A DNA stretch of 64,000 bases from Magallana gigas (lineage: Eukaryota), in NCBI RefSeq assembly GCF_963853765.1, contig NC_088854.1:39494001-39558000 (forward strand), read 5' to 3'. Both the position numbers and the translations under genes were made by a program. Shown in pieces: positions 49,849-55,172 of the stretch. Within the stretch, counting starts at the first letter, position 1. The number at the start of each line of letters is the position of its first letter. The notes beneath the pieces are model-generated. The model searched no databases and was not told the origin of the DNA. It saw only the letters and a list, made by a program, of their open reading frames with translations.

Positions 49849-49912
<64 letters not shown>
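49849..49912. repeat. (AG)n microsatellite
   Basis: Seen directly in the sequence. Confidence 0.95.
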
Positions 49913-49916
<4 letters not shown>

Positions 49917-49923
49917 ACAAATG

Positions 49924-51564: not shown

Positions 51565-53096
51565 ATGGCGAAGTCCGCAGAAGTAACACTGGCGGAGATT
51601 AAACTCTTTAAACATGATGGAGGAACTACAAATGGAGCGGACATATTACCTTCAGGACCAATGAAATATTCTCTTCTTGTATTCCTTCGGAATTTTGCAT
51701 GAATAGGGTGGTAAGTTGTATAACTCGCGTCGAAATCATTTTCTAACTTGAGTTATCGTTCTCTCGTCATTACGCAATATCTCTTAAAGCTCAGTACAGT
51801 GTATGTTCAAAAATAGTTGACAGGGTTGGGTCGAAATGTTTCATTTAAAAAATTACTCTAAAAATAAAGTTTTAATTAGTTTCACGAAGTTGATTAAAAT
51901 TTGATGTGTTTATTCTTTTTTCATGTATGTTCTTTTATGTTTCGTTGATATGAAATGAAGGTATTTTTGAGATATTCATCATTACTGTATAATATATAAA
52001 TTCATTTTACTCCTGGTATGCTCATTGCAATTGGTTTAAAAATGGATTGATTTGTGTCCATATATTTCAGTCAGCTGAAAATGCAGGCCTTATCTCCTTT
52101 AGCGGACAAGCTTAAGGAGCATCACACACGGCTTGTGTTTGTCGGCTCGTCCACTGTGGACCAGATGGAGGAATTTATGCGCAGTCCAACGGTCCTTATG
52201 TCTGGCGAACTATACTCGGACCCCACTACTTCCCTTTACAAAACATTCCACATGAAGAGAGGGCGATTTCGCTCACTTGTCATGCCGATTTGGAACAGCG
52301 TGTCGAGATATGGATGGAGCGGGGCTGTGGAAGGTAAGCGAAAGTACATCTTTTTCACTTATAATTGGCATGTATTTGCAAACATCGTGGTATACTATCA
52401 TATGTTGGTTGATGACTACAACTTTAAATGCTGCAGTTTATTCGGGAAAAAACCCACAAGGAAACAATATAAAAAAAACGCAGATCAAAACTTTTTAAGA
52501 CTTTTTTGTCATTTATAAATCTACATGTACCATATGATATTCATTAGTCCTGCAAATCTGTGATTAAATATCTGTGTTTTAAGCTCAGATATGGAAACCT
52601 CAGAGGCAGCGAACGGTGTTAGATTGCTATACATGTATATAGAATTGCGTTATATTTTCAGGAGTAAAACTGGGTTTAGAAACATCGCACCTTGCAGGGG
52701 ACTCTTGGATACAAGGGGGTACTATTTTATTGGACCAAGATGGAACTATTTTGTATCAGGTACAGTGTATTAGAAATGTTTAAACAGACATCAATTCTTG
52801 CTACTAGCTCTTTATAGTAAATTGCGTGTTTTGAAATTGTTGTTTCATTGCAATGACAATAATCACGTGGTGCTTCGCGATTATTGGCTCTGGGCCAGCA
52901 GTTTTAAAAAAATTATGAACATGTATGAATTTGCAATATGCATGATATACTTTTTTTTTAGCACCAGGAAGAGCACCCTGCTGACTGGCCCGATATGACC
53001 GAGGTATTACGAATGGTTGGCTTCACTGAAGTACCTGTGGATTACGATAGAGCTGTTTCCGAATGGATGCATGCAAGACAAAACGCTCGGAAATAG
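51565..53096 (+). CDS. Selenoprotein of the AhpC/TSA-2 (PRXL2 / SelU-SelL) thioredoxin-fold family, most like PRXL2C/AAED1; 213 aa with Sec46 (UxxC)
   Basis: Exons 51565-51710, 52071-52333, 52662-52759, 52962-53096 (TAG); 642 nt; phases 2, 1, 0. In-frame TGA at 51700-51702 in LVFLRNFA-U-IG-C. Downstream family motifs: ELYSDPTTSLYKTFHMKRG, GDSWIQGGTILLDQDG, HQEEHPADWPDMTEVLRMVG. SECIS present in the 3' UTR. Confidence 0.92.
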
Positions 53097-53135
53097 CACA
53101 GCTAGATGATGAATAAAGTGTTTATTTGTTGTCTG

Positions 53136-53207
53136 ATGGTTAGATGAAATCATGACGAACTTTGTGTTAAATGCTTATACAAGCGAACCGAAGTTCTGAG
53201 CTAACAT
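53136..53207 (+). promoter_or_regulatory. Type II eukaryotic SECIS element
   Basis: Helix I GTTAG/CTAAC; core ATGAC...TGAG (tandem GA); helix II GAACTTTG(T)GTT/AACCGAAGTTC (11 bp plus one bulge); apical AAA (53169-53171); mini-helix TGCTT-ATAC-AAGCG. Folded by eye. Confidence 0.9.
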
Positions 53208-54728
53208 TATCCAACACACAGACACATATGAACTTTTATTTTCATTTTATCAAAGCAATTTTTTTGTGGTGTTGATTTCACATGTTATCAACCAGTCATT
53301 TAACTTTATAGAATCATGTTCATAATATAATATTTACATTAATTTGTACAAATTCTACAAATATCCACTATTTTATACATTTTAACTTTGAAATTAAAAC
53401 GGTTTTAAATTGATCTGTTACATGTATTTCATTCTGCATGTCAAGTGTTCAAAATGAACGAAGAAAACACCATACATTTAATCGTAGGGCTGTTTTTAGT
53501 ATGATGTAGTTATAAGATTGCAAAAAAATATTACACCGAAGACTGTCTTGATTTTTCAGAAATTTCAAAAACTATATATACCACTACAAAATAGTCCCCA
53601 ATATTGAATTTGTATTTTTAACTTTGACGACATTGCAATCCCCATATTAACAGGTTTTTAAGACGAGAGACCATGGGATTCAGATAGTATAATGTATTGA
53701 AATTACAATAAAACACAGAATGCATGCATGTAGTTGCTGTATATTATTCCATATAGATAAGTCGGGTGCGATCATATGTTGTATGAACACCGCTCTATAT
53801 ATTTTTCCTCCATAGAGTCAACAAAAATAAGTGACAGGTGCAAACTAAATGTATACCAGCATACTCTGATTGTTCTAAACACAGTATTAATAATAATGTA
53901 TTTAAGAAGGAATCGGGAATTACTCTTATTATTATAATTATAAAAAGAGAAACATTATATATTTCAAAGTGGTTCATTCGGTAGACATTGCCGTGTCAAT
54001 CCGGAGGTTTTCTTGCTTCATTTTTTAAGATCTAAATTATGACATTTTCAGAAACAGTTTTGTACATGTAACAACTGAAGCAACCGTGTCTCATTATTTT
54101 CAACTATGACAGCCAGTTGTTGCATGAATTTTCAGATAACTTTGAAACTTAAGTTAATATTACTTTTTGGCGTCCGTTTTGAAAAATTTCCAACGTTATA
54201 CATAATTTTATCGATAATTAATTCTTTTTCTGTAATTTCATAGGTTTGTGTTGGTAAAAAAAACAAAAATTATTTTTCCAATTTAAATTTGAGGTTGAGA
54301 CAGGCCCATCACGACTGACCGAAAAAAAGAGACACATGTGCATGTTTATTGACCCAGAGGACGAGACCACTACCCTCCCTAGTTATACCGTCTCGCTAAT
54401 CTAGTTCCAATGATATGCATTGGGACTGATATTTTAAGAGGTATTTGATACTATGAGCTATGTAGCAACCTCTAATGATACAACGTCCACTAATGATATA
54501 ATGTTTCATTAGTGGTCAGGATGTTGACCACTAATGATATAATTTTATCATTAACGAACAACCTAACCGTCCGCTAATGATATAATTTCAGATTTGTATC
54601 ATTAGCGGTCAAAAACCGTAACCTCTAATGATATGGAAAAAAACTGAGAAATAAGTACTACCTTGACCACTAATGATATACATTTGCACACATTTTCAAT
54701 TGCATTAGTGGATGGATTTGAAACATTT

Positions 54729-54872
54729 NNNNNNNNNNNNNNNNNNNNNNNNNNNNNNNNNNNNNNNNNNNNNNNNNNNNNNNNNNNNNNNNNNNNNNNN
54801 NNNNNNNNNNNNNNNNNNNNNNNNNNNNNNNNNNNNNNNNNNNNNNNNNNNNNNNNNNNNNNNNNNNNNNNN
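54729..54872. other. Assembly gap (N run)
   Basis: 144 N. Confidence 1.
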
Positions 54873-55001: not shown

Positions 55002-55172
55002 NNNNNNNNNNNNNNNNNNNNNNNNNNNNNNNNNNNNNNNNNNNNNNNNNNNNNNNNNNNNNNNNNNNNNNNNNNNNNNNNNNNNNNNNNNNNNNNNNNN
55101 NNNNNNNNNNNNNNNNNNNNNNNNNNNNNNNNNNNNNNNNNNNNNNNNNNNNNNNNNNNNNNNNNNNNNNNN
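55002..55172. other. Assembly gap (N run)
   Basis: 171 N. Confidence 1.

What the first reader, a model, noticed from the sequence alone, without database searches (positions are those of the whole stretch)
53136..53207. Well-formed type II SECIS 40 nt after the stop codon
Seen: all SECIS parts pair by eye. These are helix I (GTTAG/CTAAC), the AUGA/GA quartet, an 11-bp helix II with two strands matching by Watson-Crick or GU pairs, the unpaired AAA and an extra apical mini-helix. This independently supports the Sec reading and argues against a pseudogene.
Basis: partly seen in the sequence, partly recalled or inferred. Interest (0 to 1): 0.75.

Follow-up and report, generated by a model that had tools for sequence, protein, structure and literature searches.

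The report
Genuine SECIS of a SelU-like gene
The hairpin at 53136-53207 is very probably a working selenocysteine-insertion signal in the 3'UTR of an expressed mollusc thioredoxin-fold (PRXL2/SelU-type) selenoprotein gene. This is ordinary biology, but standard gene annotation misses it.

Summary
They lie 40 nt after the stop codon (TAG 53094-53096) of a four-exon gene. That gene has an in-frame TGA (51700-51702) in a U-x-x-C redox motif.

RNA-seq contigs confirm every splice junction. One contig carries both the TGA and the hairpin, so the element sits in the mature 3'UTR. The in-frame TGA is kept in the orthologues I could read in oysters, mussels, Haliotis, Pomacea and unnamed contigs, and a distant homologue has Cys at that position.

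SECIS-like hairpins lie in the 3' regions of the orthologues. Across seven sequences the lower 8 bp of helix II pair in 96% of cells, and all 8 pairs show double-sided changes. AUGA, AA and GA never vary. Part of this covariation is circular, because some candidates were chosen for pairing.

Rfam SECIS_1 hits the element below its threshold (18.8 bits against 35). It also hits the orthologous sites in another oyster (19.4), Haliotis (25.7) and Mytilus (29.2).

Weak points: helix I as drawn is not conserved in the closest relative, and one RNA allele breaks a helix II pair.

Verdict: a real type II SECIS and a new member of a known kind. Interest is modest.

The parts
51565..51710 (+). Exon 1 coding part. 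ATG is at 51565. The exon ends with TG of a Cys codon that is split by intron 1.
   Evidence: Read from the sequence. The splice joint 51710|52071 is seen in RNA contigs of 3 runs and in one raw read. The peptide is conserved in orthologues.
51700..51702 (+). In-frame TGA, read as Sec at residue 46 in the motif F-A-U-I-G-C.
   Evidence: The TGA is kept at the same codon in L004, L008, L009, L011, L012, L013, L014, L015, L019, L022 (Mytilus), L023 (Pomacea) and the spliced contig L003. The homologue P0011 has C-V-S-C there.
52071..52333 (+). Exon 2, the core of the thioredoxin-fold domain.
   Evidence: Pfam PF13911 AhpC-TSA_2: E 8.6e-11, 42.7 bits against a cut-off of 27. Splice joints are seen.
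52662..52759 (+). Exon 3.
   Evidence: Splice joints 52333|52662 and 52759|52962 in RNA contigs. Weak PF13911 match.
52962..53096 (+). Exon 4 coding part, ending with stop codon TAG at 53094-53096.
   Evidence: The spliced CDS is 642 nt, giving 213 residues including Sec.
53097..53400 (+). 3'UTR, transcribed at least this far. One run's contig continues to 53667.
   Evidence: RNA contig record 9 of run X6 runs without a break from exon 1 (51619) through all three splice joints to 53400. X1 also covers up to 53400 and X7 up to 53667.
53136..53207 (+).
53139..53143 (+). Helix I, 5' arm GUUAG (tentative).
   Evidence: It pairs with 53201-53205 in this sequence. It is not conserved in L013, where it reads GUUCC.
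53152..53155 (+). AUGA of the SECIS core (5' half of the non-Watson-Crick quartet).
   Evidence: Invariant in all 7 aligned elements. Aligned to the AUGA of Rfam SECIS_1.
53157..53168 (+). Helix II, 5' strand, with U 53165 bulged.
   Evidence: Folds. RNAalifold predicts it independently.
53169..53171 (+). Unpaired AAA (the AAR motif).
   Evidence: AA is invariant in all 7 elements. It begins 13 nt after the A of AUGA.
53172..53185 (+). Apical mini-helix UGCUU/AAGCG with loop AUAC. This makes the element type II.
   Evidence: Folds. In L013 a C-to-U change keeps the pair as U-G and the loop changes. Comparable mini-helices occur in L004, Haliotis and Mytilus.
53186..53196 (+). Helix II, 3' strand.
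53198..53199 (+). GA of the SECIS core (3' half of the quartet).
   Evidence: Invariant in all 7 elements.
53201..53205 (+). Helix I, 3' arm CUAAC (tentative).
   Evidence: The RNA allele C53201T keeps a G-U pair.

Best explanation
The stem-loop at about 53136-53207 is the SECIS element of a four-exon, single-copy gene (51565-53096, + strand). The gene encodes a 213-residue thioredoxin-fold protein of the PRXL2/SelU (AhpC-TSA_2) family.

Inferred mechanism, from established knowledge of eukaryotic Sec insertion:
1. In the mRNA, AUGA (53152-55) and GA (53198-99) form the kink-turn-like non-Watson-Crick quartet that SBP2 binds.
2. The 11-bp helix II places the unpaired AAA at the canonical distance.
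3. The mini-helix caps the element, making it form 2 / type II.
4. The SBP2 - EFsec - Sec-tRNA(Sec) complex then recodes the UGA about 560 nt upstream (codon 46) as selenocysteine.
5. The result is a U-I-G-C redox centre in place of the family's CxxC.

Shown here: the sequence parts, their folding, transcription and splicing, conservation of the UGA and of the hairpin architecture, and presence of tRNA-Sec genes.

Inferred, not shown: quartet geometry, SBP2 binding, and actual Sec insertion.
For: - **Anatomy and chance.** All parts are present and fold as described. My first descriptor found this site alone in 128 kb of both strands at 10 bp or more. The corrected one adds a single probable chance hit inside exon 1. 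Random sequence gives 0.3 hits per 128 kb at 11 bp or more.
- **Rfam on the window.** SECIS_1 aligns end to end at 53143-53211 with 18.8 bits. E is 0.82 for 601 nt times 4227 families, so about 2e-4 for this one family by my division.
- **Rfam on orthologues.** The same model hits the orthologous 3' regions: L004 19.4 bits, Haliotis asinina 25.7 bits with E 0.012, Mytilus trossulus 29.2 bits with E 0.004.
- **Expression.** One RNA contig (X6, record 9) joins exon 1 from 51619, the three GT..AG-spliced junctions and the 3'UTR to 53400. It therefore contains both the UGA and the SECIS. Two further runs show the first two joints and cover the 3'UTR, and the polyA raw-read run has single reads across those joints and reads over the SECIS.
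- **The UGA.** It is in frame and kept in every orthologue read, with synonymous variation beside it (GCA, GCG, GCC, GCT before it). The spliced metagenome contig L003 reads A-U-L-A-C-Q straight through. P0011 has Cys there. Exon 1 upstream of the UGA is conserved as protein: E 1e-16 to L004 and 9e-9 to Pomacea.
- **Covariation.** RNAalifold on 5 sequences predicts helix II, with 8 of 9 pairs changed on both sides. On 7 sequences, 96.4% of cells pair against 59.5% in shuffles. All 8 pairs show double-sided changes, and sliding the partner drops pairing to 54% or less.
- **Sequence-alignable relatives.** In the two oysters that align by sequence, the changes are structure-preserving: G-C to U-G and U-A to A-U in helix II of L004, and C-G to U-G in the mini-helix of L013.
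- **Machinery.** Two tRNA-SeC(TCA) genes are in the genome, the better at 77.3 bits.
Against: - No match reaches Rfam's gathering score: 18.8 against 35 bits, and the gathering scan of the window is empty.
- Helix I as drawn loses two pairs in the closest relative, L013, without compensation.
- The allele T53194A is the main allele in RNA contigs of runs X6 and X7. It breaks the A53159-U53194 pair of helix II with no compensating change.
- The Haliotis, L011 and Pomacea elements were picked by a scan that demands pairing, and the Mytilus one by a covariance model. Their contribution to the covariation counts is therefore partly circular. Rfam gave no hit for the L011 and Pomacea candidates.
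- No SECIS was found within 2 kb of the stop in a second mussel (L015).
- The fold z-score is modest, -2.2.
- Sec insertion itself is untested.
Confidence: 0.9

Rival explanations
1. It is a chance AU-rich hairpin that merely looks like a SECIS. The TGA is then a true stop, or the gene is a pseudogene or has its real start at the Met after the TGA.
For: - The Rfam score is below threshold.
- The fold z-score is only -2.2.
- The window is AT-rich, about 33% GC, which favours ATGA/AAA/GA motifs.
- Public gene models of the orthologues do start at the Met after the TGA.
Against: - The descriptor hit rate gives about 7e-4 for a 300-nt UTR.
- The same architecture recurs in the orthologous 3' regions, with compensatory changes and Rfam hits in three other species.
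- Exon 1 upstream of the TGA is conserved as protein, and the TGA codon itself is conserved from oysters to gastropods.
- A homologue has Cys at that position.
- The gene is spliced and expressed.
Confidence: 0.05
2. It is a conserved 3'UTR hairpin with another role, such as mRNA stability, localisation or a protein-binding kink-turn, and does not direct Sec insertion.
For: Conservation and covariation show a constrained structure but not what it does. Kink-turn motifs (tandem G-A pairs) also occur in other RNA-protein complexes; that is established knowledge, not tested here.
Against: - The invariant parts are exactly the SECIS-defining ones: AUGA, AA at the canonical distance, and GA.
- The element travels with a conserved in-frame UGA at a redox Cys position.
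- An mRNA with such a UGA needs a SECIS, and no other candidate exists in the 3'UTR.
Confidence: 0.03
3. The region encodes a C/D-box snoRNA-like RNA. A C-box-like AUGAUGA lies at 53106-53112 and a D-box-like CUGA at 53196-53199.
For: Rfam snoU43 matches 53106-53195 with 21.9 bits and E 0.69.
Against: - The score is far below that family's gathering score of 45.
- The stretch lies in an exon (the 3'UTR of a spliced mRNA), not in an intron.
- The AUGAUGA box is absent from the orthologous region of L004, while the SECIS parts are kept.
- There is no convincing terminal stem (by eye).
Confidence: 0.02

Closest known systems
Eukaryotic SECIS element, form 2 / type II (Rfam RF00031 SECIS_1)
   Same: - AUGA and GA core.
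- A helix II of 11 bp.
- Unpaired AAA 13 nt after the core A.
- An extra apical mini-helix.
- Location in the 3'UTR of an mRNA with an in-frame UGA.
- Full-length alignment to the Rfam model.
   Different: - It scores 18.8 bits, under the gathering score of 35.
- The AAA is a pure 3-nt bulge with no unpaired base opposite.
- Helix II carries one bulged U.
- Helix I is short and poorly conserved.
- It starts only 40 nt after the stop codon.
Selenoprotein U / PRXL2 family (SELENOU1/PRXL2A, SELENOU2/PRXL2C, SELENOU3/PRXL2B; Pfam PF13911 AhpC-TSA_2)
   Same: - PF13911 domain.
- U-x-x-C where family members have C-x-x-C.
- The best PDB match by sequence is prostamide/prostaglandin F synthase (PRXL2B), E 7.5e-7.
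- The best Swiss-Prot fold matches are human PRXL2B and PRXL2C, both 27% identical (from a low-confidence model).
- NCBI names the orthologues 'peroxiredoxin-like 2C' and 'AAED1'.
- Sec-containing SelU proteins of invertebrates, including one in the mollusc Lottia, are already reported (PMC3473315).
   Different: - Only about 27% identical to the human proteins.
- phmmer with exon 2 found just 15 representatives with E of 0.001 or less among 1.84 billion proteins, so this is a narrow, divergent clade.
- The subfamily (2B-like or 2C-like) is unresolved here.
- PMC13134290 reports that, in its mainly vertebrate data set, all Sec forms belong to the SELENOU1 branch.
Orthologous elements in Mytilus trossulus (L022:10651-10711) and Haliotis asinina (L002:4355-4421)
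   Same: The same gene with the same in-frame TGA (seen in Mytilus; the Haliotis locus did not reach exon 1). The SECIS lies in the 3' region, with AUGA, helix, AAA, mini-helix and GA. Rfam SECIS_1 scores are 29.2 and 25.7 bits.
   Different: The helix II sequence is almost entirely different (compensatory). Distances from the stop codon are about 280 and 346 nt instead of 40-56 nt.

Membership tests
Eukaryotic SECIS (Rfam RF00031 SECIS_1) | Conserved AUGA on the 5' strand and GA on the 3' strand, able to form the non-Watson-Crick quartet. | tested here: met
   AUGA at 53152-55 and GA at 53198-99. Both are invariant in 7 aligned elements. The quartet geometry itself cannot be tested.
Eukaryotic SECIS (Rfam RF00031 SECIS_1) | A helix II of about 9-14 bp separating the core from an unpaired AA(R) motif. 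| tested here: met
   11 bp plus one bulged U. The AAA at 53169-71 begins 13 nt after the core A. The lower 8 bp are supported by covariation.
Eukaryotic SECIS (Rfam RF00031 SECIS_1) | Score at or above the family's gathering threshold (35 bits). | tested here: not met
   18.8 bits, and the gathering scan of the window is empty. Over the whole genome the search scored 129 first-look candidates and listed one match, 37.9 bits, over the cut-off. The model therefore looks insensitive here. I treat this as a limit of the model, not as exclusion.
Eukaryotic SECIS (Rfam RF00031 SECIS_1) | Located in the 3'UTR of an mRNA that has an in-frame UGA. | tested here: met
   A single RNA contig spans the UGA, all splice joints and the element. 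The UGA is 559 nt upstream in the mRNA.
Eukaryotic SECIS (Rfam RF00031 SECIS_1) | A basal helix I below the internal loop. | tested here: inconclusive
   GUUAG/CUAAC pairs in the window. The 5' arm is GUUCC in L013 with no compensation. Other orthologues have helix I stems of their own.
Eukaryotic SECIS (Rfam RF00031 SECIS_1) | Binds SBP2 and directs Sec insertion at UGA. | not testable with these tools
   This needs a reporter assay, a binding assay or selenopeptide detection.
Type II (form 2) SECIS | The AAR motif lies in an internal loop or bulge, with an additional mini-helix above it. | tested here: met
   The 5-bp mini-helix 53172-76/53181-85 appears in the minimum-free-energy and centroid folds. 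It is kept in L013 through a C-G to U-G change.
SelU / PRXL2 (Pfam PF13911 AhpC-TSA_2) | Domain match above Pfam's gathering score. | tested here: met
   Exon 2 alone gives 42.7 bits against a cut-off of 27, E 8.6e-11.
SelU / PRXL2 (Pfam PF13911 AhpC-TSA_2) | Redox motif C/U-x-x-C at the N-terminal end of helix 1, with Sec aligned to Cys in homologues. | tested here: met
   U-I-G-C in the window. U-x-x-C in all orthologues read. C-V-S-C in P0011.
SelU / PRXL2 (Pfam PF13911 AhpC-TSA_2) | Assignment to one subfamily (PRXL2A, 2B or 2C) by phylogeny. | tested here: inconclusive
   Human PRXL2B and PRXL2C tie at 27% identity in a fold search made with a model of mean pLDDT 61. No tree with vertebrate sequences could be built.

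The most novel reading that the evidence does not exclude
The gene and its SECIS mark a mollusc-wide, Sec-containing clade of the PRXL2B/2C-like branch of the SelU family. Public annotation truncates every member I saw (the Haliotis, Mytilus and Pomacea models begin just after the Sec codon), and current selenoprotein surveys may not list it. If so, Sec use in the SelU family outside the SELENOU1 branch is maintained across a whole protostome phylum.
Probability: 0.3. Interest if true: 0.35.

Novelty: new member of a known kind. Interest (0 to 1): 0.3.

Why it matters
It establishes that the upstream TGA is a selenocysteine codon, so the gene is neither a pseudogene nor a gene with a downstream start. 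The true product is a 213-residue protein with a U-x-x-C redox centre.

The orthologues in Haliotis, Mytilus and Pomacea are truncated or flagged low quality in public records, so the result points to a systematic annotation error. It also adds a well-supported invertebrate SECIS that the Rfam model scores below threshold, which is useful for improving SECIS models.

It does not change how Sec insertion is understood.

Tried and rejected
- **Rfam gathering scan.** The scan of the whole window found nothing; only the permissive scan shows SECIS_1.
- **Own covariance model.** Model R1, built from five elements, re-found only its training sequences. It found no SECIS in the Mytilus, Pomacea, L003 or L014/L015 loci, and all other hits scored 17 bits or less. 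It added no independent evidence.
- **Descriptor bug.** My first descriptor scan was over-greedy and missed the Pomacea candidate. I corrected it.
- **Unsupported candidates.** Rfam gave no SECIS hit for the L011 and Pomacea candidates, so I treat both as tentative.
- **Second mussel.** No SECIS was found within 2 kb of the stop in L015. The 3' regions of the two mussels share no alignable block.
- **L003.** This contig ends 204 nt after its stop and shows no SECIS.
- **Paralogues.** The gene is single copy in the genome, so there is no paralogue comparison.
- **Subfamily assignment.** The AlphaFold model of the Haliotis orthologue is poor (pLDDT 61), and the fold search ties PRXL2B with PRXL2C. 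A profile search returned no vertebrate PRXL2 proteins.
- **Literature.** The paper describing the Pacific oyster selenoproteome (Baclaocos et al. 2019, cited in PMC13134290) is not held. I could not check whether this gene is already listed. Searches for SelU or AAED1 together with oyster or selenocysteine found nothing.
- **snoRNA reading.** Rejected; see the rival explanations.

Full report
**1. The observation**

- Helix I: GUUAG (53139-43) can pair with CUAAC (53201-05).
- Core: AUGA (53152-55) faces GA (53198-99).
- Helix II: GAACUUUG-U-GUU (53157-68) pairs with AAC-CGAAGUUC (53186-96). That is 11 Watson-Crick or G-U pairs if U53165 is bulged.
- AAA (53169-71) is unpaired.
- Mini-helix: UGCUU/AAGCG closes on the loop AUAC (53172-85).

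ViennaRNA reproduces helix II, the AAA bulge and the mini-helix in both the minimum-free-energy and centroid folds. Energy is -19.7 kcal/mol and z = -2.2. The stop codon is TAG at 53094-96, so the element begins 40 nt after it.

To test chance I wrote a SECIS descriptor: ATGA-N, a helix of at least 10 bp with at most one defect, AA at 10-14 nt, then N-GA. Its first version hits this site alone on both strands of the 64-kb window. A corrected version adds one site inside exon 1. Random first-order sequence gives 0.3 hits per 128 kb at 11 bp or more.

**2. The gene it belongs to**

Upstream on the same strand lies a four-exon gene:
- Exon 1: 51565-51710
- Exon 2: 52071-52333
- Exon 3: 52662-52759
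- Exon 4: 52962-53096

Exon 1 holds an in-frame TGA (51700-02). The next Cys codon is split over intron 1 (TG|T), so the mRNA reads F-A-U-I-G-C. The spliced CDS is 642 nt, giving 213 residues with Sec at position 46.

Exon 2 matches Pfam AhpC-TSA_2 (PF13911) at E 8.6e-11, above the curated cut-off. The gene is single copy in the 564-Mb assembly.

Contigs of three RNA runs show the GT..AG joints exactly where predicted, and a polyA raw-read run has single reads across the first two. One contig (X6, record 9, 892 nt) runs from exon 1 through all three joints to 53400. The UGA and the hairpin are therefore on one mature transcript, about 560 nt apart. Another run's contig extends to 53667.

**3. 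Is the TGA a Sec codon?**

phmmer with exon 2 against 1.84 billion representatives found only 15 proteins with E of 0.001 or less. I fetched their contigs. tblastn shows all four exons in:
- a close relative (L013, 96% identical in exon 2);
- a second oyster-like species (L004-L008, about 70%);
- an unnamed mollusc-like contig (L011);
- Mytilus trossulus (L022) and mussel-like contigs (L014, L015, L019);
- Pomacea canaliculata (L023).

L016-L018 have exons 2-4. L009, L010, L012, L020 and L021 are partial. Haliotis asinina (L002) has exons 2-4 only, because its locus did not reach exon 1.

In every locus that holds exon 1, the codon after ...F-L-R-N-F/L-A is TGA, followed by x-x-TG|gt. The flanking Ala codon varies synonymously. 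The spliced contig L003 reads A-U-L-A-C-Q in one frame. The homologue P0011 has C-V-S-C at this place. Exon 1 upstream of the TGA is conserved as protein out to gastropods (E 9e-9), so translation does not start after the TGA.

The genome carries two tandem tRNA-SeC(TCA) genes. The Sec reading is therefore well supported apart from the hairpin.

**4. Is the hairpin a SECIS?**

Rfam results:
- SECIS_1 aligns to 53143-53211 over its full length with 18.8 bits. This is below the gathering score of 35.
- E is 0.82 for 601 nt times 4227 families, so roughly 2e-4 for this one pre-specified family by my division.
- The same model hits the orthologous 3' region in L004 (19.4 bits), Haliotis (25.7 bits, E 0.012) and Mytilus (29.2 bits, E 0.004).
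- Over the whole genome, the search scored 129 first-look candidates and listed one match, which exceeds the cut-off. The model therefore looks insensitive here, and a sub-threshold score does not disqualify the element.

Evidence from the two relatives that align by sequence:
- In L013, helix II is identical, the flanks and the apical loop differ, and a mini-helix C-G becomes U-G.
- In L004, helix II has 11 contiguous pairs. G-C becomes U-G and U-A becomes A-U relative to the window, and it keeps its own AAA and mini-helix.

Haliotis has the same plan: 8 bp, a one-base bulge, 2 bp, GAAA, then mini-helix UCCU/AGGA. Its helix sequence is almost entirely different.

Covariation:
- RNAalifold on five sequences predicts helix II on its own, with 8 of 9 pairs changed on both sides.
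- On seven sequences, 96.4% of cells in the lower 8 bp are paired against 59.5% in shuffles.
- All 8 pairs show double-sided changes, and sliding the partner by one to three columns drops pairing to 54% or less.
- AUGA, AA and GA are the invariant columns.

This covariation is partly circular. The Haliotis, L011 and Pomacea elements were chosen by a scan that requires pairing, and the Mytilus one by a covariance model. Rfam gave no hit for L011 and Pomacea.

**5. Weak points**

- Helix I as drawn (GUUAG/CUAAC) is not conserved. L013 has GUUCC with the 3' arm unchanged. Other pairings below the core are possible.
- In RNA contigs of two runs the main allele is T53194A. It breaks the A53159-U53194 pair without compensation.
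- C53201T keeps a G-U pair in helix I.
- A second mussel (L015) shows no SECIS within 2 kb.
- None of this outweighs the concordant evidence, but function has not been shown.

**6. Rival explanations**

- A chance hairpin or pseudogene is contradicted by expression, by conservation of the UGA and of exon 1, and by the recurrence of the element.
- A C/D-box snoRNA reading (snoU43, 21.9 bits) fails for three reasons. The stretch is exonic, the score is far below threshold, and the C-like box is missing in L004.
- A non-SECIS regulatory hairpin cannot be excluded formally. However, the invariant bases are exactly the SECIS-defining ones, and the mRNA needs a SECIS.

**7. Comparison with what is known**

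The element is a form 2 (type II) eukaryotic SECIS. The protein belongs to the PRXL2/SelU family:
- The best PDB match is prostamide/prostaglandin F synthase (PRXL2B), E 7.5e-7.
- The best Swiss-Prot fold matches are human PRXL2B and PRXL2C, both 27% identical. The model behind that search has a mean pLDDT of only 61.
- NCBI names the orthologues 'peroxiredoxin-like 2C' or 'AAED1'.

Sec-containing SelU proteins of invertebrates in all three subfamilies, including one in the mollusc Lottia, were reported in 2012 (PMC3473315). A 2026 vertebrate-centred survey found Sec only in the SELENOU1 branch (PMC13134290). I could not resolve the subfamily. I also could not read the oyster selenoproteome paper.

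The public models of the Haliotis, Mytilus and Pomacea orthologues begin right after the Sec codon or are flagged low quality. The family is therefore routinely mis-annotated.

**8. Verdict**

It is a new member of a known kind. It is valuable for annotation and for SECIS models, but it is not surprising biology.

The scan's own companion note on the gene (s1-382347) agrees with what I found.

Noticed in passing
L002, L022, L023 (proteins P0008, P0019, P0026): Public gene models of the Haliotis asinina, Mytilus trossulus and Pomacea canaliculata orthologues start at the Met just after the Sec codon, or are flagged 'LOW QUALITY PROTEIN'. Exon 1 with the in-frame TGA lies upstream in the Mytilus and Pomacea loci.
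   Followed up: partly
window 51614-51691 (+): This is the only other hit of my SECIS descriptor in the window (11 bp, one defect). It lies inside exon 1 coding sequence, ending 9 nt before the UGA. The span is 78 nt with a very large loop, so it is probably chance.
   Followed up: no
window 53106-53112 and 53196-53199 (+): C-box-like AUGAUGA and D-box-like CUGA give a sub-threshold snoU43 match (21.9 bits against 45). The AUGAUGA is kept in L013 and absent in L004.
   Followed up: partly
window 53194 and 53201: Two RNA-contig alleles fall in the element. T53194A breaks a helix II pair and is the main allele in runs X6 and X7. C53201T turns a helix I G-C pair into G-U.
   Followed up: partly
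G000:C3:53011124-53011209 and about 1.2 kb downstream (L024:1501-1587, 2681-2766): Two tandem tRNA-SeC genes with anticodon TCA. The better one scores 77.3 bits against Rfam tRNA-Sec.
   Followed up: yes
proteins P0010, P0015, P0024: Some distant homologues of this family end in a hydrophobic C-terminal stretch that looks like a tail anchor. The window's protein lacks it.
   Followed up: no
G000, whole genome: Of 129 first-look candidates scored with Rfam SECIS_1, one match was listed (C2:56415651-56415717, 37.9 bits), and it is over the cut-off. The general model looks insensitive in this genome.
   Followed up: no
window 49850-49920; 54729-54872; 55002-55172: An (AG)n microsatellite that translates as RERERE in all frames, and two runs of N. 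I left the N runs untouched.
   Followed up: no
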